Program-made: the position numbers and the translations under genes
Assembly (NCBI RefSeq): GCF_040938485.1
Contig: NW_027271844.1
Span: forward strand, 434,001-498,000
Direction: 5' to 3'
DNA length: 64,000 bases
DNA from: Diadema antillarum
Taxonomy: Eukaryota
Part shown: positions 33,737 to 62,040 of the stretch, in pieces
Layout of the letters: each line of letters starts with the position of its first letter
How positions within the stretch are numbered: position 1 is the first letter of the stretch
Notes under the pieces: model-generated
Database searches by the model: none
Told to the model about the DNA's origin: nothing
The model's input: the letters and a program-made list of their open reading frames with translations, nothing else

Positions 33737-33797
33737 ATGACTATGAGTCGGAAGTGTACGATATTTACGTTGCTCAGCTATTGCGCACTTTTACAAG
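33737..33797 (+). CDS. Ig-TM-GTPase gene exon 1 (signal peptide)
   Basis: MTMSRKCTIFTLLSYCALLQ, G|GTGAGT consensus donor, phase 1. Confidence 0.8.
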
Positions 33798-34719
33798 GTG
33801 AGTGGATTTCCACACTCTCTTCCTTTCTCTTTTATCCCTTACCGCTAGCAGATATTATGCGAGTAAGTAAATAATTATATATTATATATACAGTGCGAGA
33901 AGAAGATCATTCATGGACGTAGTTAGTGATCAACGTGTGTGTTTATTGCCGAGCTTTCGGTCTCGTTCGGACCTTCATCAGGGCTGTAATGATACAAAAA
34001 TGACTCACTCGTATGGCTACACTCGTAACAATATAAATCTAACTAGCGTGAGTCTATAATGACTATGTCATCAATGAATCCGTAATCATATAACAGAATA
34101 CAATAATAATATACATAATCAATTTCATATTATTGAATACATTTCATATGAAGGTCCGAACGAGACCGAAAGCTCGGCAATAAACACACACGTTGATCAC
34201 TAGCTACGTCCACGAATGCTCTTCTTCTCGCACTGAATATAAATAATGAAAGAGCTACACTGGTGCTGTAAATGGNNNNNNNNNNNNNNNNNNNNNNNNN
34301 NNNNNNNNNNNNNNNNNNNNNNNNNNNNNNNNNNNNNNNNNNNNNNNNNNNNNNNNNNNNNNNNNNNNNNNNNNNNNNNNNNNNNNNNNNNNNNNNNNNN
34401 NNNNNNNNNNNNNNNNNNNNNNNNNNNNNNNNNNNNNNNCTTAGTCTTATTTATAATGCATTTTATAACGTGCTATAATGCCCCTCCTCGGCAAACATAG
34501 CCACACAGTATCACATAAAACGCCTCGCTTTACAAGCATTGTAAATGCAAGTTCCACCTCGCGTGAATTTGTATATGGGAGAAGAGAACTATGTATTCCC
34601 TACCAATGAATTTATGACGAGAATCACTAAAGCTGCAAAAAATATATAGATGCTGTAGAATATGCATACATTCACGTAAATGTATAGACATATACTGAGT
34701 ATGTGTATCATATACATGT

Positions 34720-34751
<32 letters not shown>

Positions 34752-35924
34752 GTATATGTATATGTAGAGAGAAGGAGAGATAGATAGACAGACAGACAAA
34801 CAATCAAATAAAGAGAGAAAAATACTCAGTTAAGTTTTACTGAGCTCAAGTACTTCCAGGTCTTAGGTTTACTTAATTCAGATAGATCTTGTCTTTCGTT
34901 TCTTTCCTTTTCTTGCACACAAAGCGTAGATCTTGTGGATATTACTAGAAAAGAGATTGACTACTATTTTGTCATCTCTGTCTTCAATGAATGATGATTG
35001 AATGAGAGAAGATTGCATCATGAAAATTTAGGGGGTTTTGTTTTTTGTTTGTTTGTTTGTTTTGGTTTTGGTGTTTGTTTGTTTGTTTTTTGTCGGGGGA
35101 GGGGCCACTGGTGATGCAACAATATTTCCTCTCGAACAAAAAGTACTAATTGTTATATACTCTTGCAGGGGCACTCATAGGACCAGTCATCGAGCAGTGC
35201 GGGGACTCCCCGCTTCCCCCCTCTGCCATGTCTGCGGTCTGCTCTCTCAAAGCGTCGCGACGAAAACCCAAGGTGGATCTAGATTGTCGCCTAAGCGGAT
35301 TCACGGGGAATGCTTCCCTAATTTGGAGTTCATCCGAGAAACCCAAGATACCGAGTCATCGACACAAGGATCAGCTCCCCGATGGCTCCCCCGTGCTCGT
35401 AGCTACTATAAGCGTGGACGCCAAAGAAGAATTCGAACAGACATTCACGTGCTTCGCAGACGGTGACGAAATTGCGGGATACCCTTCCGCGACAGTGACG
35501 ATCCTTGCGATGAAAGGTGCGTAATCAATCCGATGAAGTGTCTTCGAGCTAAGCTACATACCCAATGCATAAACTGATGAGCAATTTGTTTTAGTGTTGC
35601 GTTATAGGATCTGCTCATATGAAGTTAAGAAAACGTCAAAGAGTCCCAGAACAAACCTCGCAAAGTTTAAAGGACTCAGTTGTTTAAGAGTCGAAAAGCT
35701 GCTACGGTTTATCCCTGTTGTTTTACGTTTGCAAATAAGAGAGATCCCATTGACCTAGCATACAAGTGCTTACTGTATTCTGTTTTTTCCCCTATTGAAA
35801 TAAAACATGTTCTTTTAAGACTGTAAACCTTGCATTGCAGCCAGTATCATTATTCACGTCACCATGGTCACGTTGGGTTATGTCACGTCACGTAATATTA
35901 TGGCGCCTCCCCTACTCCTCTTCC

Positions 35925-35977
<53 letters not shown>

Positions 35978-38900
35978 CACAGCAAAGACACTGATGCAAT
36001 AAACAGATACTCATGAATATATTATGCCATGGTAGATAAAGATTCGAAACATAAGGCAAAAAGGGCAATCTATTGGGTTTTCTTTTTCATTCCAATATCA
36101 CTGGTTTTTGCATTTGTTTTTAGCGCTTCGTTAAAACATGTACCTTTAGGAGTACTTTTATTCTCTCTCTCTCTCGCTCTGCCCATTCTTTGGCTTCATT
36201 AATGGGTCACAGATATCTATTTTATCCTGGATATTCGTACAATTTTTTTTCCTTCTTCTCGAACTGTGCAGATTTTCTTCCTTAACCAACTGAAATGTTG
36301 TATGTGACTTTTATAGTGTGTTTTGATGGCTGTTGAAGTTGTTGGCTTTTCGATAACCTTTTTTTTTTTCAATTTATCTATTAACTCTTCAGAGGGAAAA
36401 TAGTCGAAGTTAACCAGGGCCCCATTTCATAAATGTTGATATGATGGCATCTCTTGCCTATAGCAACAGCCAATCAGGAAGCTGGATTCTTGTCATTACC
36501 ATGGTAATTGCCATTCCAGCAAAAGTTGCTACCATAATCAACTTTTGTTAATGATATGTCGTCCAGGAGGACTAATGTTTGAATATCTCTGATGATGGTG
36601 TGTTCTGCTTATGCACAAGGCAGTGAAAGATATCATTTATGAGATATCCATAATGAAATAAGCCATATAGATAAAGTCCTACAGAAGCTACAAATTCTCC
36701 GCAAGAGTATAATGGAGCTTTGCAGATCTAAAGCCCTAGAAAAGCTACGAATTCTCATCCTGTCTGTATGAAGAGACATAACATTCAGGAAAATATTTCT
36801 TTTTTTTTTAATCTAAGAAGACTGACCAGTTATCAGGAGGTCGTAGGTTCGTTTCCTGCTCGAGTATGTGCGCCCATGATTTCTTTTGTCATGCCTATTA
36901 CTAAAACACTGATCAATTTCGGTTCTTACTGGCGTCGATGTAAAGCAACTTGTCAATCAGTTGCAATAAGAACTGGACTGAAGAATTTCATCAATTTGGA
37001 TATTTACATAAATTACGTAATTTAATGTCCAATATAACTACTGATGCAACAAATGTTTATTGTTTGTCGGTTCGTTTGAAGCTGGTCTATCGACGGGTGT
37101 AAGGGTCTTCATTGCTTTGCTCGCCGTCATCATAGTCGTCGCCATCTCGATGGTCGTCACGCTGGTAGTGCTTAGAATTCGCAGCAAGATTCGCCGACCA
37201 CGAGCCCGGAGTCACGAAGCCATACCGCTGGGTGAGTTGCACGGGGGAGGATGTACTACATTCACCAATGACATAATTATTATCAGTTTTATAAAAATGA
37301 ATATCGCACTTCCCTCCCTCCATTAGAGATACGTACATTGCATGGATCACATGAGAGATAGATTAAACATCTCCAACGTTATTTAAGTTGTTTATAATCA
37401 TAATCTCTACTATATTGTGCCTGTTAAAAATTTATCGGAGTGTATTTCTAAGATACATACAAAAGATGTATATTGGACTATGAAGTATAACTATAACATA
37501 AGAGAAATCTGAAAGTGAAACAATCATTTACGTCAGGAAATAAAATGTCGATCTTACCTGGCATTAGAGAGTTAAAATTAACCCCAAATAAAGGAATGAA
37601 GTGCAGGTCCTCATTATAATTTTGCCATGATTCTTATTTGTTGGAAGGTAGGCCTAAGGATCAGTTTATTCAATTCATTGATAAAGATCGGTCCCTTTAT
37701 TGATGCTAGAGGAATTTCTATACATTTCTTCGGAAAGGTACTATTTTATAGAATGAGCATTAGCAAAGACTAGCAGTTTCTCCTCATTTGTTGGACTAGA
37801 AATGCTGATTCTACCCTAACAGACTCTTTCTGATTTTCTTCTAAAGTTGGTTTTGATCAAAGGCGACAGTCACTTAGAAAAGAAATGCAGGAGTACGACG
37901 GTGGCAACGTCAACATCAAGATTTACGGTCGACGAGGTTCCGGGAAATCGGCATTGATTAACTCGATGAACTTCGCGTTATCAGGTATTAGTGTGCCATT
38001 TGAATTACCTATCTTAGCGCCTAGCTAGATACTAAGCCTTATTGCCACTGCTGTCAATGTGAGCACTTAACTATTTACAAGAATTTCATTCATCCGAGAG
38101 TGAAATGTAAATTTCTTTTTCATTTCATATGAAGGTAGCATTCAATTCCCAGATAGTACGCGAGCTTAACGAAACTTGAATAGGCCAATGAAATAACACG
38201 ACTGCATCATTAGTTGCACAAAAAATTACCTTCATTTATGGGATTTCGCGGGAAATTATAAAGTGTGATTGATAATAGCAGATACATTTGCCCATGAATT
38301 TATTAGAACAAAATATCCTGGGGAAAAGAATAATCGATTGAATTGTTTTGATCACAGCAAGCTCGGAGCATTGTTTGAATCAAGATAATCATATTCAACA
38401 TATAACAGATAGTTTCTGAAATCAATTTAGACGTTCGTTTCCCCCATGAAGATTTTATCTGCACTGTTCATGCTGTTACCGAAGTTATCCCTGATATTGA
38501 TTTCAATACCACTGAGAAATCTTGTATTTTTCTACATTGACATGTTTGAATATGTTGTCTTGTGCAATTTCTTTTGTGCTGTTATGTCAGTTAATCAAAT
38601 GTGATTGAACGCAAAGTCAAATGTATAATTCTGAGTTGTTTACTATGTCTTCATTGCGTTAATTTCCCATTGCACTTCTAAAAACTGCAGAAAACAAATC
38701 GAACCAAAACAATCAAATCAAGGATGAGTCTTGATTATAATGCGACTGTCTTCATCGTCATTTAAACGCGTTTTCCACACTTCAGGGAAAATATTTTCGT
38801 ATCGTCAAGGTACCTTGGTGAGCATAATTTACACCCACTTGTCAAATCTAACCATTCAGTCACTAATGTATTAAGCAAGGTTTCGTTGCAAGTATTTGTC

Positions 38901-41900
38901 TTAATTGTGTTGCAAGACTATGAGAGCACTTATTCTCACCTGTATTTTGAACTAATTATCCTCAGACTCGGTTAAAAACATTTTTCTGTTTTCAAATTTC
39001 TGTCAGGTGTCTACAGTAATCTGGCAAATGAAGGAGACAGTCGTCCTGAAGAAGATGCCGCCGAAGAACCACGCCACAGCAAACTCACAGAATACATCAC
39101 GCTTATTGAGCATCGTGCGATGGCGGACTACTCAGACTTGGATTTGACTGGCAATACGGCAAAGGGTAGATTCGTAGTTATTCAAAGAAAAATAAACAAA
39201 AAGAATAAGCAAAATAAAAGATGAATAGAGGAAAGGGAGTACGTCAGTAAAATATGACATTATCAAAACTGCTTGGACTTTACTTTGTAACAGATATAAG
39301 TCACAGAACTGGGAGTGAAATGTTACAAAATAAAATGGCAAATTGACAGCAACATTTTGCTTCTCTCAACATTTTGCAACAGCAACAGCACCACTTCTCT
39401 CAGATCATACTTATCAAAGGAGTGGTCACGTGACGTACAACTATTGTGATAATAGAATAAATAGTAAAGTAATACTTATTGATCGTGTATTGTTCTTATC
39501 ATTCCTTCGCACATTTTTTCTTATTCATCAGTTTATATGACAAAAGTCTATATAAAAAAAAAATGAATTTGATTTGTTGATTATGTTTCATAACTTATCG
39601 TCTAGACGGTGTCGGCGCCCTGCGTACACATCAAGATGAGACAAACGTAGTGATCTTTGTCTGCGATTACCCGTAAGTCCAACCCTTTAATCAGTTGACC
39701 CCTTTCAGCAAATTTTAACTATTGATTGCATGAGTGCTACTTCATAATGATTTAGTTTATCTGTTCACCGTCAGTCACACAAGGTTTGAAAGTGGATATG
39801 ATATCATACAACTTTTCATGATCCTCGATTTTGTAAAGTTTTTATCTCGCTATTAGTTAAGTAAAGTCACGATGTTACTGTCAATGCAGGTCCACAATAA
39901 ATAGATAAAATCTATCTATTCTCCGTCAATCCCAACAGATTTGAAAGTAGATACGATAATCATACAACCTTTCATGATTCTGGATTTTGTGAAGTTTTTA
40001 TCTTGATATTAGTTAAGTGAAGTCCCCATATTACTATCAATGCAGGTCCACATTCAAAGATGAGGATCAAGTACTTTCTATTCGAAAAGTGATGGACAAA
40101 CTGCGTGAAATTTACGGTAAGCTTGGAACTCATTTGTCTTCATCGTTTAACGAGTATCAAGCCTTGACACCACTTCAATTGTTACTTCAATTTACTTCAA
40201 TTGATGTCTTTATTGTTTTATGTCACCCTTAGATATATCACCAATTTTTACCGATTTGTGGTGATAAATCCTAAGGACAACATCCAACAATGGCATGCAA
40301 ACAAACACACACACAAGCACATAATCCCAATTATGTTAAAACTTATCTCGTTACGTTTGGCCTGATTGATAGTTTGAGAACTATCAATGAATATCAAGAC
40401 GTGAAACGAACTAATAAAGGCTTGTTTTGCAGGTTCTTTAACCCTATTAGTAGAGCAGTTAAGCCCTCAAAATCACGTGAATTGTGCAAAATTTGACTAA
40501 AGCATGAAACTTTCACCAGTGTTAGTACATACCATAAGATTTATTTTAAGATCGGGAGGTAAGTCTGATTTGACCTCTGATGACCTCCAGAGGTCAATGT
40601 ACTTTAGATATCAGAAAATCGATGTTTTTAGACATTTGTGAATGATATATGTGGTTATGTTGCTCTAAACATGCATTTATACCACAGAGAAATCATTTCC
40701 AGATTCAACAGAGCACTGACAGGTTTTTACCTTTGACCTCTGATGACCTCCATTACCAGAGGTCACTGAACTTTAAATATCAAAATATCGATGTTCTGAG
40801 ACATTTGTGAATGATATATGTGGTTATGATTCACTAAACATGCATCTATACTTCAGGGAAACCATTTTCTGATTCCACAGAGCATTGACAGGTTTTAACC
40901 TTTGACCTCTGATGACCTTTGGAGGTCAATGACCTCAAAATATTATATCGATCTGTGATGTCATTGGTTATAATGGTAACCATTGTTAAGATGTACAAAA
41001 CAAGCATATCTGTCTTACCATGAAATTGTTTTCATATTCTAAAGAGCAGACAGGTTTCTACCTTTGACCTCTGATGACCTTGAGAGGTCAATGACCTCAG
41101 AATATCAGAATATTGAACTATGACATCATTGGTGAAAGGTCAAACATGGTAAAGATGTACAAAACAAGCATATCTGTGTACAATGACATCGTCTTCATAT
41201 TCCAAGGCACACAGACGAGTTTCTGCCTTTGACCTCTGGTGATCTCGAGAGGTCAATGACCTCAAAGTATCAGAATAGTTTGGCATCATCAATGGTAAAC
41301 ATGATGATGTTCAGGAGAGCACTCGTAGGCCCTGCTTATTAACGAGCCATTACCTTTCACCTATGAAAATCACACAAGGTCAAATACCTCTAATGAAATG
41401 TGAGGATGTTAATATTGATATTGCGATAGTTAATACAGTATAGTTAATAATTGTTTATAATGTAGGGCTTACAAACCATGCATTTCTGTTACTAAAAAAG
41501 TGGCTACTCATTCCGCAGAACTTTTCAGGTAATTATCTAAGTCGGGTATGTGCACTGAGCAAGGGGTGTCGATCTGTTTTCACGTGGGGGGGGGGGGGAC
41601 TTGGAAATATGTAAAAGCATAAGTTCATGGTGCAAAGGAATGAAGCGGAGGGGCAGGGGGAGGGTGTGGGTGGGGGATTGGATTTTTGCAGGTTTAGACC
41701 TGAAATCAGTGATTCAGTGTAGCTCTTGTTTAATGTGTGCGTCATCACTTATACGGAAGTTGATGGGGTGTGGGCGCATCTCACCTACCCCCCTCCCAAA
41801 GACGAAGTTTTTGATTTTTTTTTTTTAGAATCTGATGCATACGTTTTGGGGAATATTTGGAAAATTATGGATCGCCAAAGTGTACCAAGTCTATATGGAT

Positions 41901-44900
41901 GGGAACCCAGCAAGGGCAGCGTTGGCGAGGGTAGGGTATTCCACTCCCATTCGAGAGAGCTCTTGTATTTTGAGAAATGAGATTCAACGACCTGGCACAC
42001 ATGCACTTTTGAAGGAATACCTCGAAATTTGTATCAGAAAGGTGTAGTAAGTCAGCCATCTATGGAGGGAGACCAATTGACAGAAGGATGTGGGTGGAGG
42101 TATCCCCTTCCCACATTATGGAGCTTTTGCATTCTTTTGTTTGCAATTCAATGATCTCGTGCCACTCTTGGTTGAACTACCATTTTGAAAAAAAAAAGTC
42201 CATACCCAAATGTGTAACAATAATCAATGCATGGAGGAGAGGTTGATACAGCGAGAGGAGGGTATGAAAGGGGCTGTCCCCCAACCCTTCCCATGCGAGG
42301 GAGCCCTTGGAGTAAGAATAGAAATGTTAAAAAATCTTGTATACACATTTATAATGGAATATTTGGGAAATTATCAGTAAAAGGAGTGTACCAAATCTAA
42401 GGGTAGAAACCGAGGAGGGATTGTTAATTGAAAGATACACTACCCCCTCAAACAAGAGGGATTTTCTTTAATATGTCGGAACTGAAATTAAAGATCTAGT
42501 ACATCTAGAACAAAAATGGGACAAAAGCACTGAGCGTATATGGAAGGGGACATAACGAAAGATAATGTGGGGGAGGGGGTATGCAAAGCAGATTCTGCCT
42601 TTTAATCTGGTGCATACTATACCTGACATGTTCAGTGACAATTCATTTTCTGTCAAAAAAGTGAAGAAAAAAAAATCTCCATCTCAGGAAATACTTGGAG
42701 GCAAAGTTTTATGTCCCCACCATTCCCCCTCCCATATTTTCTCGGGAGGCGGGGCAAATGCCTCTTGCCCTCCAAAATGAACACTCGTGCATATATAGGA
42801 AAGCTTTTTCATCTTTGGAATTCAAATAAAAATATCTCTCAAAAACATTTTCCATAGAATTAGGGAAATTATCATTCCCCAAAGTATGTTATATCTGTGG
42901 AAGGAACCAAGCAGGGGGAAGGAGTCTATTGAAAGGAGATATCCCCTCTCACAGAAGGGAGATTTTGCATTTCAGAATGAAATTTCAACAATCCGGTGCA
43001 CACTTAAAGTGAAAAACTTGGGCAGTTTTCTGTCTAAAAAGCAAAAAAAAAAAAAAAAAACCAAAAAACTAACAACAACAAAACATAGTCCACATTTCAG
43101 AATTTAATGGGGTGGGGGTCAACTATACCTGCCACCACCCCACCCCTCCTCCAAACTGATGCCCCGGTATGTGCATGTGTTGTATTCCACTTGTTGAAAA
43201 GAAAAGAGTTTTAAGAAACAATATTGTTCAGTGGTCGCTATCCCAGTCAAGTAAATTGTTTATCCATAAGGTGATTTCCATCACCTGTATACCTTAAGAT
43301 GATGTAGGCCTGGTATTTGCCTTGCACGTTATTACATCTATTTCTCTTTTAGTATTCTCGTTTATATTTTGATGTGAAAGTGCTTTACTTTGCCATGATT
43401 TTATTTGTACATAGAAAAAATAATCCAAGACTGAAAATGAAACTGATACAATATTTAATGATTGACATGATGCACATATTGTGTATTTCTATAGCAATAA
43501 AAGTGAGCAATTCAAAAGGCGTGTACTCATTTCACATGAACATTAGCGATGACCCTCTGACCTCTGGAGGATATTGAAAGATATGGCCAGCTGCTTGTGA
43601 AATAATAATTATATTAAAAAAAATACATTTTGTGTGTGTGTCCAAAATTGTATGCAGAGTATTCCACACACAGTTCAATTTTGACTTCCATCTAGGACAA
43701 TGAGCGGTTACTTTTTTTCTCAAGTACACTGTAATATCAAAATCTATTGAAAAAAACACGGTGGCGGCTGGGTCTAACACATTATCATTCCTTTTCGTTG
43801 GAGATCCATGCCGGATGGTCAAAACAAACATAAAAACAGATATCTCAGACCTAATTGTTATAACAAAGCATCATATCCTCATAGACCCAACCCAACCCTC
43901 TATGCCCAGACAATGTAAGCCACCCCAAGGACTTACTTGGAGCTTTAGAATATCCTTTGTCAACAGAGAGAGACATCCGAACCTTTGCAGTGCCGACTAA
44001 GATCTGCCATGGAACCGACTGGTATTGGCTCTGAATCATTGACAGCAGATCTCGTTTCCTATTCTCCTTCTTCTTCTTCTTCTTCTTCTTCTTCTTCTTC
44101 TTCTTCTTCTTCTTCATTATACTGTGTAATCTTGTAATATTCTGCCATGGAGCCTTTTCTTAATTGGTTAAAGAAGGTATCCAAAGAGCTATATGAAGCA
44201 TAAAACAACAAACAAATGCAAAAACAAAAAGAGAGACATACGTATCTTTAATAACAGAGCTGAATATTGAGTATCTCTCTCCTGAAGTGTTTCAAAGAGA
44301 TACAAGAGACAGTGGCCTAGAGTAGCTGCCACCTTTTTTGGGAGTAGGCCTACTTTGTGTTCTTGCAAATGATGCCTGAAATTTTTGGTCATTGGCCCTT
44401 TTTGAAGAATGCAGCAATGGAGCCACAACTTCCTGCGGAGTGGATGTTGTGGGGTTCTTGTTGCATATAACATCATCGCTGAATTTACTTGTGCTGTACT
44501 TTCTTACAGGGATTGCCATTGTAGTTTTGTTTTGTTTTGTTTTGTTTTGTTATGTTTTTCAAGTGTGGCTGTAATACTGCTTGTTTTGCATATGATGGTC
44601 ATTGCAGCTAAAGAGTGCATATCTTCTCTGGATCATTCCAAACTTCATGATGTTTCACCTGGGTGAATGGATCCCAGATGATGCATGCATATTCCAGGAC
44701 AGTCCTGAGCGGCATGGAGTAGCAAAACACCTGAACTTAGTGATATATTCGTCTGGAGAGAGTCTTTGGTTGAAGTATAACCTTTTTAAGCTGCTGTGGC
44801 GATGTGATTCTAGCTGAGCCTCCTATTGGAGTAGACTTCAAAATATTTTGCACAATCCGCTTTCTCCATGGTTCGCCATGAATGCTTATCTATTCCCTGG

Positions 44901-46416
44901 GTAGGTCTCGGATGGCAATAGCTAGTTGCAATACACAGGATTGCTTCATGTGGAATGCTTGTTGCGCCTCACAGTATGTCGAAGTTTTCAGGATGGTCCA
45001 TGATGTCGCAGCTGTGGACTGTATACTCCAGGACCATGAGTCATTCATCGCAGTCATACTGTAACAACCCACCAGCTTAACACTGGCCAATACAGGCCCA
45101 CCAGCTGGAAACTATGCAAATATTGCCCATGAGCTTGACACTTAGGCAAACTAGTAACATAATGAGTCCGACAAATGGGGGAAAAGATCTATGAGACTTA
45201 CACTGAATAGATTAAACACTCTGTATATCAGTCTCGTGGGCCTTGTTTTCCTCGAGTGTTGAGATAATGGCCATATTTGCCTATATTTGCTAGTCTACAT
45301 AACTAACCCAAACATAACAGTCATATTTGAGGTCACTGCCATCACTCAAGAAACTTAAGCTTTATTTCTGAAGTAATTGACCTCTCACATTTCAGAGACC
45401 TGTTACTATAAACCAATGCTCTGTGGAATATGCATACATACTTTGATCAAAACGTCAATGCGTGATTTGTACATGATTAAGCATTTACGATTAAACCAAT
45501 GAAGCCAAACATCAATACAGGTAAGCCTACACATATTCTGATATTCTAAAAGCTCAGTGATCTCTCATTGTCCTGAGAGGTCAAAGTTGGATATGATGCA
45601 CAGGCTAATGACCAATGTCCATGGAATGACAAGATTCTTCTATTATAGCATAAATGATGGTACATCGGGTATAAGTTGACCATTGACTATACATAGAATA
45701 TCAATATTCTGATATTTTGAGGTCATTGACCTGTCACCTTCCTCAGAGGTCAAAGGTAGAGACACGTGAGTAATTTCTATTGCTCTGTGGAATAGAATAG
45801 GAAAACAATTCAATTGTAATACAAATGAATAAAACATCTATATCATGTTTATCATCAACCAATTGCACCAAATATCAATGTTCTGACATTTTGAGGTCAT
45901 TGACCTCATCATAGGTCATCTGAGGTCATCAGAGGTCAAAGGTAGAAATCTGACTCGAAAGGCTCAGTGGAACATTAAGGCAATTCCTCTTACAAAAATT
46001 AGTTTTTAGTACATAATTTTCGTGTTTCAGTTATGAGTGACGCATTAAAATATCAATTTTCTGACATTTTGAGGTCATTGACCTCTGGAGGTCATCAGAG
46101 GTCAAAGGTAGAAACCTGTCAGGGCTCTGTGGAACATAAAGACAATTTCACTGTGACAAAAATTAAGTTTTAGTACATCATTACTGTGTTTATCATTAAC
46201 CAATGGCGCAAAATATCAACTTTCTTAGATTTTGAGGTCATCGACCTCTAGAGGTCATCAGAGGTCAATTCAGACTTACCTCCTTACTTAAAATTAATCT
46301 TATAGCATGTACTAACAATGGTGAAAGTTTCATGCTTTAGTCAAATTTTGCACAATTCTTCGGCTTATCTGCTCTACTATATTAAGCCCAAGCTATTTTG
46401 ACCCCTCACAGGCCCA

Positions 46417-46450
<34 letters not shown>

Positions 46451-47838
46451 ATGTGCCCATATATATATATATTTTTTTAATTATTATTTGATGTATCATC
46501 GTCATATTTGCACATGGGTAGAGTAAGTCATACTCTACATGGCTATACATTTGAATTTTCTCAAGGTCACCCATGGAGGGCGCTGTTTACCAAAATATAA
46601 AAAAATACATAGGAAATATGCTAAAAACATGATTTTTCTGTGTAATTTCTTTATCCCCATCATATATGTTTTATTATAGACCATTCACTTTCATATTTGC
46701 CACAAATGATACGCAAGTAGAGTCTTATTATTTGTTATAGTTGAAATTTCTCAAGGTCACCACATGGGGGCGCTATTCATATCAACATAAAGAAATACAT
46801 TATGAGACCTGAGATTAAATGTTTGGGACGGGTACATGTAAAGTTATGACATTTCATATTGGCATAATGTAGTGGCATTTTGTGTTTCCAAATTGATAAT
46901 ATGATAAGCTAATGATATTAGAGGCATAACTTGGGTGAAAGAATCAAAATAACACAAAATAGAAGGGCAATCTTTAGTAAATATAAATTGTTATTAATTA
47001 TCTCTATTACATCTCTTGTTTTATGCCTTTGTCACATAAAAACAAAGGAAACAATAAAAAAATCTTTCCAGGACCACAATTACTTCAAATTTTGCTCCTT
47101 CAACATATTTCAGCCAAGAAACACCTATTTCATACACTATAATGCTGTTAAATGAAGTGGGAACAGAAAAAAAGATGCAAAATCTGACTGACATGGTTGT
47201 CAGTTTATGGTTGCCATGGCAACCAGCAACATCAGATATAGCTAAATTATATATCAAATTGTTTGTAATAAGATTTTAGGAAAAGTCACCAAATTTGGTT
47301 GAAATCGGATTAAGGGCGAAGGGGTTGCAAAAGAAAATCTGGTAGGGGGCGCAATGTGCCCCCCCCCCCCTTGGGCTTTATAGGGTTTACATAAATTGGT
47401 CACAATTTTATTCTTAATGCCTCAAGCAGTTGCACTTTGATAAAAGCATCGAAAAACGAAAGATCGAATAGACTTTTCAAAAAGATATTTTGTCTTTAAA
47501 TCCACGCATATTATTAGGCCATGTATTGGCAGTATTATAGTCTTTGTATTCTACATCAATTATGGCAATTGCCACATGGTGTTGTGATTGTTTGTTTTTT
47601 ATTTGTCCTTCTTGATTCTTCAGTGTGCCCTCCGATGATTGTGCTAACCCATAAAGATGTTTGCCAAGACACAGCGAATCTCAAATCCGACCTCAAATTG
47701 GCAACGGGAGGACAGCTCTGGGAATTCGAGAATTACACGGAATTAGCCCACACGGAAGACGTCGAGAGGGACCTTCAGTTCTTGCAGCTCCTTTCGGCTT
47801 CTGTGGAGTCCTTTGAACAGACACGGGTCCAACACTAG
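33737..47838 (+). CDS. Type I membrane protein: signal peptide + Ig-like domain + TM helix + cytoplasmic IFI44-like P-loop GTPase domain; 8 exons, 1209 nt / 402 aa
   Basis: Exons 33737-33797, 35169-35516, 37082-37231, 37847-37984, 39007-39165, 39606-39672, 40046-40116, 47624-47838. All GT-AG, phases 1,1,1,1,1,2,1 join into one open frame. Ig: LDCRL...LIWSS...TFTCF. TM: VFIALLAVIIVVAISMVVTLVVL followed by a basic stop-transfer stretch. Walker A GRRGSGKS, VVIFVCD strand, IVLTHKD G4-like motif, ENYT...RDLQFLQLL tail recalling IFI44. An N gap in intron 1 could hide a small exon. Confidence 0.85.
33891..34235. repeat. 88-bp inverted repeat with 169-bp spacer (Penelope-like inverted pseudo-LTR)
   Basis: 33891-33978 is the reverse complement of 34148-34235 with about 3 mismatches; contains the hammerhead motif. 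Confidence 0.85.
33941..33990 (-). ncRNA. Minimal type I hammerhead ribozyme (Penelope/retrozyme-like)
   Basis: Minus strand ATTACAGCC-CTGATGA-A-GGTC-cgaacga-GACC-GAA-AGCT-C^GGC-AATAA: core CUGAUGA and GAAA, 4-bp helix II, palindromic AGCU helix III, UC cleavage site, GCC/GGC helix I. Confidence 0.68.
34276..34439. other. Assembly gap (N run)
   Basis: Ns within intron 1 of the Ig-TM-GTPase gene. Confidence 0.99.
35169..35516 (+). CDS. Ig-TM-GTPase gene exon 2 (Ig-like domain)
   Basis: TCTTGCAG acceptor, phase 1-1 exon typical of Ig domains; Cys (LDC), Trp (LIW) and Cys (FTC) about 55 aa apart. Confidence 0.87.
35927..35973. repeat. (CT)n microsatellite
   Basis: Direct reading. Confidence 0.95.
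36820..37000 (+). mobile_element. Degenerate SINE fragment
   Basis: B-box-like GGTCGTAGGTTCGTTTCCTGCTCG followed by SINE-like body; no clear A box. Confidence 0.35.
37082..37231 (+). CDS. Ig-TM-GTPase gene exon 3 (transmembrane helix)
   Basis: TTTGAAG acceptor, AGLSTGVRVFIALLAVIIVVAISMVVTLVVLRIRSKIRRPRARSHEAIPL, G|GTGAGT donor. Confidence 0.87.
37847..37984 (+). CDS. Ig-TM-GTPase gene exon 4 (Walker A / G1)
   Basis: TTTTCTTCTAAAG acceptor, VGFDQRRQSLRKEMQEYDGGNVNIKIYGRRGSGKSALINSMNFALS, G|GTATTA donor. Confidence 0.88.
39007..39165 (+). CDS. Ig-TM-GTPase gene exon 5 (switch / G3 region)
   Basis: TTTCTGTCAG acceptor, GVYSNLANEGDSRPEEDAAEEPRHSKLTEYITLIEHRAMADYSDLDLTGNTAK, G|GTAGAT donor. Confidence 0.83.
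39606..39672 (+). CDS. Ig-TM-GTPase gene exon 6
   Basis: TCGTCTAG acceptor, DGVGALRTHQDETNVVIFVCDY, CC|GTAAGT donor. Confidence 0.83.
39790..40055 (+). repeat. ~157-bp diverged tandem duplication including a splice acceptor
   Basis: GAAAGT.GATA.GA...TCAATGCAGGTCCACA at ~39790-39897 and ~39945-40052. Confidence 0.82.
40046..40116 (+). CDS. Ig-TM-GTPase gene exon 7
   Basis: ATCAATGCAG acceptor, (P)STFKDEDQVLSIRKVMDKLREIY, G|GTAAGC donor; phases 2-1 fit both neighbours. Confidence 0.82.
40448..46379. mobile_element. Non-autonomous DNA transposon with ~0.9-kb modular TIRs (Academ-like, tentative)
   Basis: Ends TAGTAGAGCAG...CTGCTCTACTA, 3-bp TSD TAT/TAT, TIRs built of ~165-bp subrepeats. Superfamily inferred from YR..YR ends and 3-bp TSD only. 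Confidence 0.7.
44067..45200 (-). mobile_element. CR1/L2-group LINE 3' fragment with (GAA)n tail
   Basis: Minus-strand remnants VLEYACIIWDPFTQ (followed, after a frameshift, by IQRRYA) and ETLQER; ends in a (GAA)n tail at about 44067-44115. 5' limit approximate. Confidence 0.7.
47624..47838 (+). CDS. Ig-TM-GTPase gene terminal exon 8 (G4 and C-terminal helix)
   Basis: TTGATTCTTCAG acceptor, VCPPMIVLTHKDVCQD...WEFENYTELAHTEDVERDLQFLQLLSASVESFEQTRVQH then TAG. Confidence 0.86.
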
Positions 47839-56576: not shown

Positions 56577-56819
56577 CTACAGACTGACTGTTTGCATGAC
56601 TGTCGAAGAAGACTTCGATGGGATGCTTTTCCTTGAAGAGAACGACTGCTTGCGCTGCGTGCACCACAGGTCGAACACTCTCTTGTTGGCGCAAAAAGCG
56701 AAAAAGATGTAGACCCCCTGCAGAGAGTTCAGAATGATGAAGACGTACCAGAGGGCGTCCTGTTGACAGAAAGCCGCCACGTACCCAATCAGCCAGGTGA
56801 AACCCATAATCGTCGAAAT
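56577..56819 (-). CDS. SMB-7TM receptor exon 3 (TM6-7 and tail)
   Basis: TTTCAAAG acceptor, ISTIMGFTWLIGY...LNSLQGVYIFFAFC...QTVSL then TAG. Confidence 0.94.
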   Translation of the reverse strand: MSTIMGFTWLIGYVAAFCQQDALWYVFIILNSLQGVYIFFAFCANKRVFDLWCTQRKQSFSSRKSIPSKSSSTVMQTVSL

Positions 56820-59800
56820 CTTTGAAATTAATGCCAAACAAAGAAAAGTTAGATGACCCATGAATACTCTTAATCGATCAATTTTAAAAGAGTATTTTGG
56901 TAAACAACTGTGCTCTGAATGAATGGAATAAATTAATCTCCACACTTGTCATCAAGTTGTTAAATTTTGATTTACTTCTTGCTTCACTCTGTTTCAGAGG
57001 ATAGAAGAGGAGTAGGTGTAAATCAAATAATACTTGACAGGCTTGCAAATACACGACAAGGGCTTCGTGTCATTGACCTAAAGCATGTAAAGACAAACTC
57101 GGTAGAAAATATTGACGACACAATATTCACTTGGAGAGTATACTAAGAGACGAATTCTGGGATGACTTTGTTTTCTCCAGAAAACAAATACTTTATTGTT
57201 CTTCAAATGTAGATATGACAGTGTGTTATCAATTAAGGAAAAATCTTACTCCTTCTATGTCTTTATGTTTTCCGTTTTAAGTTTCATCGATTTCAGTACT
57301 CATATTTCGCCACATAGGGAAATTGTCTTATGTACCTACTCAAGTGTCGCAGCCGTCATTCTTGTTTGCACAGTAAGTTATTCTTAAAGATTGTCCCAAT
57401 AACGAATCTGGCGCATATAGTAAAATAACTTCATGATTAGCTATTACAAACACTCCATTTCAGTAATGAAAGATGTAATCGCATTTACTGCATTTATTCT
57501 TTGTTGCATTAAGTCAATTATAACTAGGGCTTAAATGAGTATATGAATATAAGAACCACCCAAGTCCATGGAAGACCATTAATTTTCGAGTAAACTTTAA
57601 AAAACTTCATATCTTTTTTATTTGTAAAATAATATTGTATTTAACTGTGATGGGAAGGCAACATTGTATATACAAATTAGAACAATATATTACTATGACA
57701 ATTAACATTTACATTAATTGTGGAGAGGCCATTTTGTGTGATGGACTTGGGTTGTTCTTTGATTCATATACATGATATTCTGCTATAGAGATGGGAGAGG
57801 GATGAGAGAGGCGCTATAACATGAATGTAATAGTGACCCAAGTCCCTCATTCTTACATTCATATAAGATTTAACTCATTCATTTCAGGCAATTCCGGGGG
57901 TAATTAGGATTTCATTTATACACAAGATGAGTCCATGCATAAGCTACAATTTCCCATGTCAAACTGATTTTGGCCTAAAATTGGACTTGGGTCGTTCTTA
58001 TATTCAGGTCTTCAAATGCTTGTACATGGGGGAAATAAAAAACAACGACAACTAATCGGCAAACAGACAAACACATTCGGAAAGGAAAGCTAACATTTCT
58101 TTTCTTCATGTTACGTCTCATCTTCCCACGCAATATACTGGACACTTTTGTGACTGACAATATTAAAGATGGTGGTACATGCGTTTTACCTTGGTATAGA
58201 TACGCAAATTTTCTGCGTTGTTGGTTTCTGTCTTTGCGCCCTCACGAAGTTCTCTTCTCTCCCGAGTACTGAGGTGAATTCCACGGACAGTTTTGGCGAA
58301 GAAGATGGCGTTCAGCGTCAAGGCTACGGCCACGGGACCGCCGAAAGCTACCAGATTAGCGTAACCATCACCGATCCAACAGGACAGTTCATCGCCATAC
58401 CGAATGAGGTCTGAGTTCACGCCAAAACTTACAGCAACACCAACTCCCACTATCAAGAGTGGCAAGCCAAAGGCCACTAGAAGGTACTTCCTCAAGATCG
58501 CGCTGCTCTTGCCGGAAATGCTGATGGACGAATGAGCTCCAAATGTCCTAGCGAGATCAAAGGCGAGCGACGTCGATATCGAGAACACCGACAACCAGAA
58601 GAAATGTGATACCGCGGCGACAATCGAGCACGTCAATGGATGTGCAGTGGCGAACCCGCCGAGCATCAACAGGGCTTGAGCAATGAGAAGGCAAGCGCAG
58701 AGAATCATGATAAGTTTGCTACTGACTAATTTCCGCAATGAAGCGAAAGTGAAGTACGTAATGAGGGTGAAAGTGAGCGCGGTGACTGAAAGCAGCGTGC
58801 CACCAAAACTCAAATAAACATGTACAGGGGAGTACTGGAAGAATGACCAAATTGTTGTCACGTTAATTGTGCCATTTTGTGCCAAAAAGTGACATACACT
58901 AACAAGATATCCAGTATAGAAATAATTTTCTGGTGGTATAACATCACCGGTCGGCTTGTATTTCAAGCTGTTGTTCCCGTCAAATCGTTCAAACAGGTCG
59001 ATACTCAACAATAGACGGGGACAGGTAGGAGTAGTAACTGTCTGATTACAATTGATTATCGTAATGTCTTTCACGAAATTGACTGCGCCTTGCATGCCAC
59101 TATAAGTTGTTCCTAAAACCATGAAGTTGTCTTCCCCACTCCAGTCAATGCTCTCCCAAAAGGTGTCAACTTCTGTTCGCAGCTCTGATGACTCCATGGA
59201 TCGATTGCAAATTGCTAGATTGCCTGGAAAATTGCAATGTCCGAATATCGATGCGGAAGAGAGCCCGCATCCGGGGTCAAGATGGTTAGTCAAATACTCG
59301 TCAAAATGGGCCACTACGCTCGCATAGTCGACGTGAGCAAATATATTTAATCTCGATCTGTTGGTTCCAATTGTGTAGTTGTCTCGACATTCCATGGAAT
59401 GGCTTGTAAAACCTGCGATACTGTTCAGTATTTCCAACGTGCAGTTGTGAAATAGTCCGTTCAACATGCCTGAACATGTGTCGCTCTCCGATACAAATAC
59501 GATTGTAGTCATTGTGTTGTTGGTGGACTCCAGCAAGTCGCAAATCACATCCTCAACATTGTCTTCCCACACGCATTCGTTTTCATACAACGTAGAACCT
59601 TGTGGGCACGTGAGTGTCAAGCAATGGCTGGTGAAAGGGTCAAACGCCCTTCCAGAAATGCATGTTATTGTTTTTGCTGTTATAGTCTCGTATTTCGTCG
59701 AAAGCCTGACTCCGCTTTCGGAAGAAAAATCGAACAAAACTGAAATCGGCTGTCCAAGTAATGCTTCCATCCTACCTTCACAGGGACATTTGAAGTACTT

Positions 59801-62040
59801 AAAACGGCTAGGAATACCTGCAGGTGAGCAGTCAAAGTGTCCATAGTTTTCATAGATTATCAGATTGTTTTCGTACAGTACTGAATCGACATGAAGAGTA
59901 TCACACGCTTGCGAAACTAAAATATCTGTACCTAAAAAGCACGTCTCGACGGTTTGGGACATGTATCTAGAGCACGTTGTCAGAATGGGCTCATCGAATC
60001 CATAGTCTGGGGGATCAACGGACAATGTGCAGCCTGACTCGTTGACTGCTTTTTGAATCGAGAACGTTTGTTCCATTTTAAAGCTATAAATATCACAGTT
60101 TAACAGTGTCACTTTCCATGGTGTGACGTAATCAGCCGTAATACCATTGCAAACGGCACAGAAAATGTTCTTAAAACTGCCTACGCCTTCCTGGCTGACA
60201 GGTAAGTCCGCCACGGATAACTCAGCGGTTGACACGTTTTCGCATTTCCATCGAATGTCATCGTCGGTCCAATCTGCTGGACAGGACGCAATGAGAAGGT
60301 AGTTTCGCTTTTCCTCGAACATTAGACTCATCTTTGTCTTCACTTCGGAGCAGCGAAAACTGCTTCGCTGGTACTGGTGAGAGGTGATGCAACCATTGTC
60401 CTCCAGAGAGCCGTATGTGTTTACGGGACAGCAATCTCCGAACACGACGCAGGCGGCATCGCATTTACAGGATGGCGTTGTCAGAGTAGGCTTTGGACAG
60501 AGAGGATCACTGCAATTCTCATTAGGACACAGTGGGATTGACAGGTCGTTGTAAGAGATGTTGTGGCATTCTACGTTGAATGAGGAAGAGTAGGGTTGAT
60601 AAACAGAAGAAAAGAAATAATATACACGTATATAAGAAAGGTAGTTTAGGGTTAGGGTATGCTTAGGGAATAAGGTGAAAAATTTACGACACTTTTACAA
60701 TAATCAGATTTTTTTTTCAATTCAGCTCGAATCGAATCAATTCCATTTTCATCAAGTACGAAATTTTACAAGGAAAGACAATCTAGCAATAATGAGAGGA
60801 CCGAGACCCCAAACAGTAAGGGCTTACGAGATAGGTGTATCCCTTTACTTTACATTTTCAAAGGCATGTAACATGTCCATGAAAACGAGCAGATATAAGA
60901 TTGTACACTTTAGACAAACAAAGAAAAAAAAATGGTGATCAGACAGAGCATGAAGACGTCATCTACATCGGACACAAAAACACATATGCAAAAAAAAAAA
61001 ATAAAAATGTGGCATTGGTACTTTTTAAGTGCCACGAGAAAGTGATGGTACCTCTTTTCAAAGGCTTTAGATGGTTTGAAAAAAAAAATACTTAATTTAA
61101 TGTCTTTGCTATGATTTGACAGCAGCTGATTGGGCAATGACAAAAGTTGATATTTCCATAACCCGAAATGTCACTATTGTCACTCGTCATTTGGTTCAGC
61201 TTACAAAGCTTAATTTACCATTTGCAGATGAAACAAAAACCCAGCATTAGTGCTTCAAAATAGTTCTAAAATGTGAGTCAGGAATAGAAACAACCAATGT
61301 AAAAATTGAATCAGTACAATCGATCTTAAGTATAATTAGACATACAAAATGTGAACAATAGTTATAATAAGACTGTTTCCAGACTAATTCATCTACAGTT
61401 ATGGTTTATTGAAAAAAGCAGTGATATCTCCTTAAGTTTAAGGCTTTATTGCAAACAATGTTATATGGTAGGATGTTTTGTGATACAACAGACCTACACA
61501 TATCCATCAAAATGTGATATCTTGAACATTTTTCAATCACTGCTCCCAAAGGTAAACAGGTCTTTAATATGCTAATAACCCGAAATTTCACAACTCTTCA
61601 CTAATCATCTTGATTCGGCTCAATCGCAAAAAAAAAAAAAAAAAAATGAATACGCTTTCTTTTCAGATATCAAATTTTAAAGATACGAGTTGAACATGTA
61701 CTTTGTTTCATTTTTTCATGTTTTGTATAATAGAAAATGAGTGATGGGAAATGATGAAATCAAAGGAGTGAAGAGTGCGAATAAATAGGTTATGCTGAAG
61801 AAACATTCAAGAAATGGAGATTTGGAGATTAGACGACGCGTCGAGACGGAGCTGCGGATGCAATAACGTTGAGAATAAAGCAAAAGCCTTCCACATTCAT
61901 ATTACAAGCTCACCACATCCGTGATTCTCAACCGTCGACACACCGCTGACACTCGATGTTGCCTGTGACGGTGGATTGGTTGTTGATGCGCTAACAGTAA
62001 TCACCGCCCACGCCCATGCCATTATTACGCTGGTCCACAT
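56577..62040 (-). CDS. Somatomedin-B-domain class B (secretin/adhesion/methuselah-like) 7TM receptor; 3 coding exons, 2751 nt / 916 aa
   Basis: Exons 62040-61914 (signal peptide MWTSVIMAWAWAVITVSAS..., G|GTGAGC), 60570-58190 and 56819-56577. SMB-like SCKCDAACVVFGDCCP, Cys-rich ectodomain (KNIFCAVCNG), 7tm_2 motifs (HFFWLSVFS, YGDELSCWI, FGGPV, IMGFTW, LNSLQGVYIF). Phases are consistent. Confidence 0.92.
57536..58014. mobile_element. ~480-bp MITE, copy B (inverse of copy A), in the last intron of the 7TM gene
   Basis: Reverse complement of 55888-56362 along its length; flanks AA/AA. Confidence 0.8.
58190..60570 (-). CDS. SMB-7TM receptor exon 2 (SMB, ectodomain, TM1-5)
   Basis: Long pyrimidine tract and CGTAG acceptor; 2381-nt open frame; AAG|GTAAAA donor. 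Confidence 0.94.
61914..62040 (-). CDS. SMB-7TM receptor exon 1 (signal peptide)
   Basis: ACCATG start context, hydrophobic leader, phase-1 GTGAGC donor matching the acceptor at 60570. Confidence 0.83.

What the first reader, a model, noticed from the sequence alone, without database searches (positions are those of the whole stretch)
33737..47838. Candidate receptor GTPase: extracellular Ig domain joined through one TM helix to a cytoplasmic IFI44-like P-loop domain
Seen: eight exons splice in frame into signal peptide - Ig - TM - GxxGxGKS domain with LTHKD and ENYT...DLQFLQLL motifs; most exons are absent from the ORF track. Established: vertebrate IFI44/IFI44L are soluble interferon-induced antiviral proteins with an N-terminal TLDc domain and a C-terminal P-loop GTPase-like domain, and IFI44-like genes are expanded in several marine invertebrates. 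Inference: a cell-surface Ig receptor wired directly to an IFI44-type nucleotide-binding module, analogous to receptor kinases or TIR receptors but signalling through a GTPase fold, possibly by ligand-induced dimerisation. I know of no characterised receptor class with this architecture, so it may be an undescribed invertebrate immune receptor family.
Basis: partly seen in the sequence, partly recalled or inferred. Interest (0 to 1): 0.88.

Follow-up and report, generated by a model that had tools for sequence, protein, structure and literature searches.

The report
Sea-urchin Ig membrane protein, IFI44-like tail
This is a real, conserved sea-urchin gene for a single-pass membrane protein with one antibody-like outer domain and an inner nucleotide-binding domain shaped like the antiviral protein IFI44. 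It is an odd, stripped-down member of a small, undescribed urchin receptor family, and it has probably lost the GTPase "switch".

Summary
Eight GT-AG exons (33737-47838, + strand) splice in frame into 402 aa: signal peptide, one Ig domain, TM helix, P-loop domain. The N gap lies inside intron 1 and touches no exon.

- **Ortholog:** the syntenic Diadema setosum gene (RefSeq XP_072175683.1, 399 aa) uses the same eight exons. Identity is 93% and dN/dS about 0.2 in the Ig, TM and P-loop parts alike.
- **Family:** the protein belongs to a small echinoid family, usually IgV-IgC-TM-G domain. A spliced 1.7-kb Logan contig from another urchin carries that whole architecture in one ORF.
- **Inner domain:** by fold it is closest to IFI44/IFI44L (TM 0.66-0.80, against about 0.5 for GIMAPs). 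No significant sequence match to IFI44 was obtained, and there is no TLDc domain.
- **What is particular here:** there is no V-set domain. Two motifs kept by all nine aligned relatives are lost (GG-x-T to ED-AA, DNRG to EHRA), while GKS and THKD remain. The gene sits on a long branch inside the Diadema clade. I read it as a likely switch-impaired (pseudo-GTPase) subunit.

No RNA reads for this gene could be listed, and function is untested. The scan already found two-Ig paralogs elsewhere in this genome (s1-220764, s1-229737). Chordate databases hold unnamed Ig+IFI44-like predictions. No paper describing the architecture was found.

The parts
33737..33797 (+). Exon 1: start codon and signal-peptide-like N-terminus (MTMSRK + hydrophobic core), ends in phase 1
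   Evidence: Conserved (92% with flanks) and used as first coding exon in D. setosum XP_072175683.1.
34276..34439 (.). Assembly gap (N) inside intron 1, next to an inverted-repeat insertion at about 33891-34235; not part of any exon
   Evidence: The flanks are collinear with the orthologous locus.
35169..35516 (+). Exon 2: one C-type Ig domain (Cys60-Trp-Cys115 core, an extra Cys31-Cys45 pair, NAS sequon at residue 68)
   Evidence: phmmer E 1e-20 to 1e-12 against the membrane-proximal Ig domain of urchin IgSF proteins. Invariant C/C/C/W/C columns. AF2 model pLDDT 81.6 with only Ig folds among its PDB matches. Pfam on this exon alone is sub-threshold (C2-set_3, E 0.044).
37082..37231 (+). Exon 3: TM helix (about residues 146-167, KD19 maximum 3.27) followed by RIRSKIRRPRAR (7 K/R in 18 residues), so the C-terminus is cytoplasmic
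   Evidence: dN/dS 0.12.
37847..37984 (+). Exon 4: start of the cytoplasmic domain, with the P-loop/G1 motif GRRGSGKS
39007..39165 (+). Exon 5: switch region. The family's GG-x-T is ED-AA here and its DNRG is EHRA
39606..39672 (+). Exon 6: central strand of the G-like domain
40046..40116 (+). Exon 7: helix of the G-like domain. A degenerate duplicate of its acceptor region lies about 160 nt upstream and carries stops
40428..47411 (.). About 7 kb of intron 7 that is absent from D. setosum. It contains a foldback-type element (about 40479-46358) whose inverted ends are arrays of roughly 165-nt repeats. This explains the long 40116/47624 junction
47624..47838 (+). Exon 8: G4-like LTHKD, ENYT, C-terminal helix DLQFLQLL, and the stop codon
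48122..48162 (+). Two AATAAA signals, 284 and 319 nt after the stop; candidate polyadenylation signals
   Evidence: sequence only.

Best explanation
The region holds one intact, selectively maintained gene, most probably in Diadema antillarum. Its product is a type I single-pass membrane protein with four parts: a signal peptide, one membrane-proximal C-type Ig domain, a TM helix with a strongly basic stop-transfer stretch, and a cytoplasmic P-loop domain of about 215 residues whose fold is that of the C-terminal G-like domain of IFI44/IFI44L. It belongs to a small echinoid family whose usual form is IgV-IgC-TM-G domain. The same G domain also occurs behind a Death domain. This member arose inside the Diadema lineage, evolved fast, lost the V-set domain, and lost two motifs that all nine aligned relatives keep: the GG-x-T switch-I candidate and the DNRG (DxxG) switch II. 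It kept the P-loop (GKS) and THKD. Shown: gene structure, conservation, Ig fold, topology signals, fold class of the tail, the motif losses, and a transcript carrying the whole architecture in a relative. Inferred: the protein still binds nucleotide but cannot run a normal hydrolysis-coupled switch. It would then act as a regulatory or partner subunit (a pseudo-GTPase) that pairs through its Ig/TM or G domain with V-bearing, motif-intact paralogs. Clustering at the membrane would control nucleotide-dependent G-domain dimerisation, as in GIMAP, IRG and septin-type GTPases, and so downstream innate-immune or cell-death signalling.
For: - Gene model: eight GT-AG exons in frame.
- Ortholog: a syntenic locus flanked by the same MFS transporter and 7tm_2 genes, with 1:1 exons, 93% identity, and dN/dS of 0.20 (Ig), 0.12 (TM) and 0.23 (P-loop).
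- RefSeq support: two D. setosum RefSeq isoforms both join Ig to TM to the P-loop exon.
- Family: members in D. setosum, D. antillarum, S. purpuratus, L. variegatus and L. pictus.
- Transcript: Logan contig L002 (1741 bp) holds the complete 528-aa V-C-TM-G ORF and aligns to the S. purpuratus locus in 8 blocks; several block ends fall on GT donors or AG acceptors. It is therefore a spliced mRNA.
- Ig fold.
- Topology signals.
- Tail fold: in Swiss-Prot, ranks 1-4 and 6 are IFI44L/IFI44 (E 5e-9 to 8e-7, TMq 0.66-0.69), against about 0.5 for GIMAP, Toc and EF-Tu. Atlas and AFDB clusters give IFI44 and IFI44-like entries at TM 0.71-0.80.
- Motif losses are unique to this ortholog pair.
- Tree: a long stem branch (2.35) inside the Diadema clade, support 99/96.
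- Death+G protein.
Against: - No RNA run of the window's species could be listed. The four runs laid on the region behaved as DNA contigs, so the junctions of this gene rest on the ortholog's RefSeq model and on conservation.
- No significant sequence match to IFI44, to any Pfam G-domain family or to any PDB chain was obtained.
- The AF2 model of the tail is of medium confidence (pLDDT 72.6) and the switch loops are disordered.
- Which residues contact nucleotide in IFI44-type domains is not known experimentally, so 'switch-impaired' is inferred from conservation only.
- Human IFI44/IFI44L restrict RSV independently of their predicted GTP-binding region (PMC7459546). The domain may therefore act as a scaffold whatever its nucleotide state.
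- The tree placement involves a long branch.
Confidence: 0.7

Rival explanations
1. It is a membrane-anchored effector rather than a receptor. The short one-Ig ectodomain would be only a stalk or a lumenal stub, and the point of the architecture would be to tether an IFI44-type domain to the plasma or an organelle membrane. There it would act locally, for example as a scaffold or negative regulator of signalling like IFI44, with no ligand sensing.
For: This member has no V-set domain, only about 115 ectodomain residues, and degenerate switch motifs. IFI44 function does not need its GTP-binding region (PMC7459546).
Against: The Ig domain is under purifying selection as strong as that on the tail (dN/dS 0.20). 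It keeps all five invariant Cys/Trp positions of the family. Paralogs carry a V-set domain typical of ligand-binding IgSF receptors.
Confidence: 0.2
2. The Ig/TM exons and the P-loop exons belong to two separate genes, or mostly to separate transcripts, and were joined only by prediction. A soluble G-domain protein could start at the in-frame ATG inside exon 4 (37885).
For: There is no RNA evidence for this gene in this species. An internal Met lies 13 codons into exon 4. S. purpuratus has a G-only prediction, LOC576240.
Against: Exon 3 ends in phase 1 without a stop and exon 4 begins in phase 1. The same join occurs in two D. setosum RefSeq isoforms and in every paralog in five species. A spliced mRNA contig carries Ig-Ig-TM-G in one ORF. 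The S. purpuratus G-only model starts inside the P-loop, so it is a fragment.
Confidence: 0.05
3. The gene is a decaying duplicate, an incipient pseudogene that lost its V exon and its catalytic motifs and is no longer functional.
For: Loss of the V-set domain and of GG-x-T and DNRG, and a very long stem branch.
Against: The ORF and all 14 splice sites are intact in two species. dN/dS is 0.2 in every part, with dS 0.16. The derived motifs ED-AA and EHRA are themselves identical in both species.
Confidence: 0.05

Closest known systems
IFI44 / IFI44L (vertebrate interferon-induced proteins)
   Same: The C-terminal P-loop G-like domain has the same fold. They are the best Swiss-Prot structural matches (E 5e-9 to 8e-7, TMq 0.66-0.69), and Atlas IFI44 clusters match at TM 0.79-0.80. 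Both have a GxxxxGKS P-loop.
   Different: There is no TLDc domain. The protein is membrane-inserted with an Ig ectodomain rather than soluble. Structural alignments show only 15-16% identity, and no significant sequence hit was obtained. Interferon does not exist in urchins as far as is known (own knowledge).
Echinoid IgV-IgC-TM-G-domain proteins (unnamed; e.g. S. purpuratus LOC100890756, L. variegatus LOC121422193, Diadema XP_ models; scan findings s1-220764 and s1-229737)
   Same: Homologous Ig-C domain, TM and G domain. They share the P-loop, the LT-x-x-I strand, the P-x-x-V-x-TH motif, NY and the L-x-x-L C-terminal helix.
   Different: This gene has no V-set domain. It replaces GG-x-T with ED-AA and DNRG with EHRA, and it sits on a long branch.
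Butyrophilins (IgV-IgC-TM-B30.2)
   Same: Type I topology with a membrane-proximal Ig-C domain. Pfam's best weak hit for the exon is the butyrophilin Ig-C model (C2-set_3). NCBI auto-names two paralogs 'butyrophilin-like'.
   Different: The cytoplasmic domain is a P-loop NTPase fold, not B30.2/SPRY. This member has no IgV domain.
GIMAP/AIG1 immune GTPases
   Same: TRAFAC-type G fold, and they are the best solved structural neighbours (GIMAP2 2xtp, E 1.8e-5, TM 0.49). Some GIMAPs are membrane-anchored and act by nucleotide-dependent dimerisation (own knowledge).
   Different: Pfam AIG1 is far below its cut-off (13 bits against 27, on paralog P0007). The TM-score is clearly lower than for IFI44. 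GIMAP anchors are C-terminal and have no ectodomain.
Chordate predicted 'IFI44-like' proteins with I-set Ig domains (ESM Atlas clusters of 365 and 411 aa, 72 and 75 members)
   Same: An Ig domain plus an IFI44-type G domain in one protein. They are the nearest named clusters by language-model features for the full-length ortholog (score 0.87, 186 and 184 shared features) and match at TM 0.76-0.79 on the tail.
   Different: They are automatic predictions and I could not fetch their sequences, so the presence of a signal peptide or TM helix, and any common origin of the fusion, are unknown.

Membership tests
IFI44/IFI44L family | C-terminal P-loop G-like domain of the IFI44 fold | tested here: met
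   In the Foldseek Swiss-Prot search, ranks 1-4 and 6 are IFI44L/IFI44. Atlas and AFDB clusters named IFI44 or IFI44-like match at TM 0.71-0.80. The model was built from the D. setosum ortholog tail, which is 95% identical to the window's.
IFI44/IFI44L family | N-terminal TLDc domain | tested here: not met
   Pfam scans of the ortholog and of paralogs show no TLD/TLDc. The N-terminal part is signal peptide, Ig and TM.
IFI44/IFI44L family | Significant sequence similarity to IFI44 proteins | tested here: inconclusive
   Word-indexed profile searches returned only echinoid proteins. Structural alignments show 15-16% identity. No IFI44 sequence could be fetched for a profile-profile test.
IFI44/IFI44L family | Soluble cytoplasmic protein induced by interferon or virus | not testable with these tools
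   The sequence predicts a membrane protein. Expression data could not be obtained.
Immunoglobulin superfamily type I membrane protein | Ig fold with a Cys-Trp-Cys core | tested here: met
   C60, W73 and C115 are invariant across 20 homologous domains. The AF2 model has pLDDT 81.6 and all top PDB matches are Ig domains.
Immunoglobulin superfamily type I membrane protein | Pfam Ig-family model above its gathering score | tested here: not met
   On the window exon the best hit is C2-set_3 at E 0.044, 14.2 bits against a 27-bit cut-off. The homologous domain of paralogs passes C1-set and C2-set models, so the assignment is by transitive homology plus fold.
Immunoglobulin superfamily type I membrane protein | N-terminal signal peptide, one TM helix, positive-inside rule | tested here: met
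   Hydropathy maximum of 3.27 at residues 149-167; 7 K/R within the 18 residues after the helix; hydrophobic N-terminus. No dedicated signal-peptide predictor was available.
Classical switch GTPase (TRAFAC G1-G4 motifs) | G1 P-loop GxxxxGK[ST] | tested here: met
   GRRGSGKS at residues 214-221.
Classical switch GTPase (TRAFAC G1-G4 motifs) | G2 switch-I Thr and G3 DxxG | tested here: not met
   The family's GG-x-T is ED-AA here and its DNRG is EHRA, in both the window and the D. setosum ortholog. All nine other aligned members keep both motifs.
Classical switch GTPase (TRAFAC G1-G4 motifs) | G4 [NT]KxD guanine-specificity motif | tested here: inconclusive
   This gene has THKD. Family members have THGD, THRD, THAD, THAN or THAA, so only T-H is invariant and the Asp is not conserved.
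GIMAP/AIG1 | Pfam AIG1 domain above its cut-off | tested here: not met
   13 bits against a 27-bit cut-off in paralog P0007, and no hit in the ortholog. Fold TM is about 0.5.
Echinoid IgV-IgC-TM-G family (unnamed) | Homologous Ig-C, TM and G domains in that order | tested here: met
   The tree places the gene inside the Diadema clade (99/96).
Echinoid IgV-IgC-TM-G family (unnamed) | N-terminal V-set domain | tested here: not met
   tblastn of paralogs against the window finds no V-set exon or remnant. The ortholog also lacks it.

The most novel reading that the evidence does not exclude
IgSF receptors with IFI44-type cytoplasmic domains are an undescribed, ancient deuterostome class of innate-immune surface receptors, present in urchins and, as unnamed predictions, in fishes. 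On this reading the soluble vertebrate IFI44/IFI44L would be one form of a receptor-proximal signalling module. This gene would be the class's dedicated pseudo-GTPase partner chain, which regulates V-bearing paralogs by heterodimerisation.
Probability: 0.2. Interest if true: 0.85.

Novelty: new variant of a known kind. Interest (0 to 1): 0.6.

Why it matters
IFI44 and IFI44L are prominent interferon-signature genes whose biochemical mode of action is still unclear. A family in which the same fold is wired directly behind an Ig ectodomain and a TM helix, and elsewhere behind a Death domain, suggests that this domain is a membrane-proximal signalling or assembly module. That idea can be tested in a tractable invertebrate. 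It would also add a receptor type to the echinoderm innate repertoire, alongside TLR, NLR and SRCR expansions. This member, with its lost V domain and lost switch motifs under continued purifying selection, offers a natural contrast (intact versus switch-less tail) for asking whether nucleotide cycling matters for IFI44-type domains.

Tried and rejected
- **Pfam on single exons:** the pieces were too short, and only generic P-loop hits came back.
- **PDB sequence searches, single sequence and profile:** nothing significant.
- **Two profile searches of the 5.8-billion-protein set for a sequence link to IFI44:** only echinoid relatives were returned. The tool needs shared 5-mers, so this says little.
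- **RNA evidence:** no RNA run was listed. A search of kind 'any' listed 18 runs. The four I laid on the region (X17, X18, X4, X8) covered introns and high-copy repeats, so they behaved as DNA.
- **Tandem paralogs in the window:** none found.
- **GIMAP/AIG1, IRG and dynamin assignments for the tail:** rejected as nearest family, on sub-threshold Pfam scores and lower TM-scores.
- **Butyrophilin membership:** rejected, because there is no B30.2 domain.
- **The full 402-aa spliced product:** The 93%-identical D. setosum ortholog (P0028) served as proxy for folds and searches.

Full report
**Observation**

I rebuilt the gene model from the window sequence. Eight exons are each bounded by AG and GT: 33737-33797, 35169-35516, 37082-37231, 37847-37984, 39007-39165, 39606-39672, 40046-40116 and 47624-47838. 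They sum to 1209 nt and translate without a stop into 402 residues.

The product has these features:
- a hydrophobic N-terminus after MTMSRK;
- a Cys/Trp/Cys-bearing segment of about 115 residues with one NAS sequon;
- a 22-residue hydrophobic helix (19-residue Kyte-Doolittle maximum 3.27), followed by seven Arg/Lys in 18 residues;
- a tail of about 215 residues with GRRGSGKS (214), LTHKD (339), ENYT (367) and DLQFLQLL (381).

**The gap**

The N run 34276-34439 lies in intron 1, between exon 1 and exon 2, so its unknown length cannot alter the reading frame. The sequence on both sides (window 33865 and 34440) aligns in the same order and orientation to positions 10130 and 10206 of the orthologous Diadema setosum locus. 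The ortholog's protein joins the exon 1 and exon 2 residues in the same way.

**Is it a real gene?**

A phmmer search of 1.84 billion representatives with the Ig exon gave one close hit (88% identity). Its 90% cluster contains XP_072175683.1 of D. setosum, 399 aa (P0028). That protein is collinear with my model from the first Met to the last His.

Its locus (L001) is flanked by an MFS/sugar-transporter gene and a 7tm_2 receptor gene on the minus strand. ORFs suggestive of the same two genes lie in the window at 4156-6167 and 56577-60445. The loci are therefore orthologous.

All eight exons map one to one with identical lengths, apart from one 9-nt indel in exon 2. Protein identity is 93%. By Nei-Gojobori, dN/dS is 0.20 overall (dS 0.16), and it is 0.20 for signal peptide plus Ig, 0.12 for TM plus juxtamembrane, and 0.23 for the P-loop domain. 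All three parts are thus maintained as coding sequence.

The long intron 7 is explained by about 7 kb (40428-47411) that D. setosum lacks. This stretch contains a foldback-type element with inverted arrays of roughly 165-nt repeats.

**One transcript or two?**

I could not get RNA reads for this gene. No RNA run was listed. The four runs I could lay on the region covered introns and repeats and showed no exon-exon joints, so they are DNA. The indirect evidence is nevertheless strong:
- Exon 3 ends and exon 4 begins in phase 1, with no stop between them.
- Two RefSeq isoforms of the D. setosum ortholog both join Ig to TM to the P-loop exon.
- Every paralog in five urchin species has the same order of domains.
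- A 1741-bp Logan contig (SRR31798692, L002) carries a complete 528-aa IgV-IgC-TM-G ORF with UTRs. It aligns to the 14-kb S. purpuratus LOC100890756 locus in eight blocks, several of whose ends fall on GT donors or AG acceptors. It is therefore a spliced mRNA.

That contig proves the architecture at transcript level for the family, although not for this particular gene.

**The outer domain**

Pfam on the exon alone is sub-threshold (C2-set_3, E 0.044). The exon is nevertheless clearly homologous (E 1e-20 to 1e-12) to the membrane-proximal Ig domain of urchin IgSF proteins, where Pfam C1-set and C2-set models pass their cut-offs. Twenty aligned domains share invariant C, C, C, W and C columns. 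An AF2 model (pLDDT 81.6) is an all-beta sandwich whose PDB matches are all Ig domains, including Rst D1-D2, titin, MHC class II C1, B7-1 and RAGE.

Unlike its paralogs, this gene has no V-set domain. tblastn with paralogs finds no V exon or remnant anywhere in the window, and the ortholog lacks it too.

**The inner domain**

Pfam gives only sub-threshold AIG1, MMR_HSR1, Dynamin_N and AAA_23 hits, and PDB sequence searches give nothing significant.

An AF2 model of the ortholog's tail, built on an 8-sequence alignment (pLDDT 72.6, pTM 0.76), has a Rossmann-like G-domain topology. The fold searches gave:
- **Swiss-Prot AlphaFold set:** ranks 1-4 and 6 are mouse, chimpanzee and human IFI44L/IFI44 (E 5e-9 to 8e-7, TM by query 0.66-0.69). 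GIMAPs, Toc GTPases and EF-Tu follow at about 0.5.
- **AFDB fold clusters and the ESM Atlas:** many entries named IFI44 or IFI44-like, from fishes, scallop and oyster, at TM 0.71-0.80.
- **Solved structures:** the best match is GIMAP2 at TM 0.49.

It is not shown at sequence level. Structural alignments give 15-16% identity, and two profile searches of the large protein set returned only echinoid relatives, though that tool depends on shared 5-mers. There is no TLDc domain.

**The family**

Relatives with IgV-IgC-TM-G occur in D. setosum (at least three more genes on the same chromosome, two of them 2.6 and 9.4 Mb away), D. antillarum, S. purpuratus, L. variegatus and L. pictus. NCBI names them 'uncharacterized protein' or, in two cases, 'butyrophilin-like'.

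The same G domain follows a Death domain in S. purpuratus LOC105443692 (E 4e-35 to the profile; Pfam Death at 21.9 bits, just under its 22.6-bit cut-off). A D. antillarum protein with the same ectodomain and TM carries a NACHT P-loop instead (P0014).

The scan had already reported two-Ig paralogs of this family elsewhere in this genome (s1-220764 and s1-229737). Those notes name the species as D. antillarum, which fits my data: the window differs by about 7% in protein from D. setosum. Outside urchins, the Atlas holds two chordate clusters auto-named 'IFI44-like' that carry I-set Ig domains (365 and 411 aa; 72 and 75 members), and a V-set+AIG1 cluster. I could not fetch their sequences.

**What is particular to this gene**

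In an alignment of ten tails, the P-loop, an L-T-x-x-I strand, P-x-x-V-x-T-H, N-Y and the C-terminal L-x-x-L helix are invariant. All nine other members also keep G-G-x-T in the loop after helix 1 (in one member a single G followed by V-Q-T) and D-N-R-G at the end of strand 3, which is the DxxG position. The window protein and its D. setosum ortholog have E-D-A-A and E-H-R-A at these positions. They retain GKS and THKD.

A maximum-likelihood tree places the pair inside the Diadema clade (support 99/96), on a stem branch of 2.35 substitutions per site, against 0.1-0.4 for the others. The placement involves a long branch and should be read with caution. The picture is a lineage-specific duplicate that changed fast, shedding the V domain and the switch motifs, and has since been held under purifying selection.

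**Mechanism (inferred)**

The topology signals put the Ig domain outside and the IFI44-type domain in the cytoplasm. The nearest solved relatives (GIMAPs, IRGs) act by nucleotide-dependent dimerisation. I therefore think the family signals by ectodomain-driven clustering that controls G-domain association, with Death-domain and NACHT variants pointing to innate-immune or cell-death pathways.

This member most likely still binds nucleotide but cannot switch. It would act as a partner or regulator chain of the V-bearing paralogs. A rival reading, which I put at about 0.2, is a simple membrane tether for an IFI44-like scaffold without ligand sensing. Human IFI44/IFI44L restrict RSV independently of their predicted GTP-binding region (PMC7459546). 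That finding fits a scaffold role and warns against assuming GTPase chemistry. Guanine specificity is also unproven, because the Asp of the G4-like motif is not conserved in the family.

**Novelty and verdict**

Full-text searches found no paper describing an Ig-TM-IFI44-type protein. The proteins do sit, unnamed, in RefSeq for several urchins, and look-alike domain pairs exist in chordate predictions. I rate the finding as a new variant of known kinds: IgSF type I receptors combined with an IFI44-type G domain. It has an additional twist in this gene, the switch-less, V-less member.

Noticed in passing
window:40428-47411: About 7 kb of intron 7 is absent from the D. setosum ortholog. It holds a foldback-like element (about 40479-46358) whose two ends are inverted arrays of roughly 165-nt tandem repeats (arms up to 212 nt, 76-94% complementary). 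No ORF longer than 100 aa lies inside.
   Followed up: partly
window:39720-39919: A direct duplication of about 160-200 nt just upstream of exon 7 includes a copy of the exon 7 acceptor region that carries stops. One low-coverage contig of the same species (run X17) joins 39720 to 39919, which suggests an indel polymorphism or a collapsed copy.
   Followed up: partly
window:36410-36605 and 36802-36997: Two short stretches of intron 2 reach word depths of 50,000-230,000 in DNA runs of the related species. They are very high-copy interspersed repeats.
   Followed up: no
window:33891-34235 (intron 1, next to the N gap): An inverted duplication (arms visible at about 33913-33975 and 34150-34215) corresponds to an insertion relative to D. 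setosum, where 76 nt stand in place of about 575.
   Followed up: no
P0014 (D. antillarum XP_071499057.1, 633 aa): It has the same IgV-IgC-TM front end, but the cytoplasmic part begins with a NACHT-type P-loop (Pfam NACHT 26.5 bits, cut-off 26.7). This could be a modular swap of the inner domain or a mis-joined model.
   Followed up: partly
P0038 (S. purpuratus LOC105443692, 368 aa): A Death domain (Pfam 21.9 bits, cut-off 22.6) is fused to the same G domain (profile E 4e-35), with no Ig or TM. This links the domain to death-fold signalling.
   Followed up: partly
window:4156-6167 (-) and 56577-60445 (-): ORFs suggestive of the flanking genes seen at the D. setosum locus, where Pfam assigns an MFS/sugar-transporter gene and a 7tm_2 receptor gene. 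Both are in conserved synteny; the window ORFs themselves were not scanned.
   Followed up: partly
ESM Atlas clusters: Chordate clusters combine Ig domains with immune G domains: I-set plus IFI44-like (365 and 411 aa) and V-set plus AIG1 (480 aa). The sequences could not be fetched, so the presence of a TM helix is unknown.
   Followed up: no
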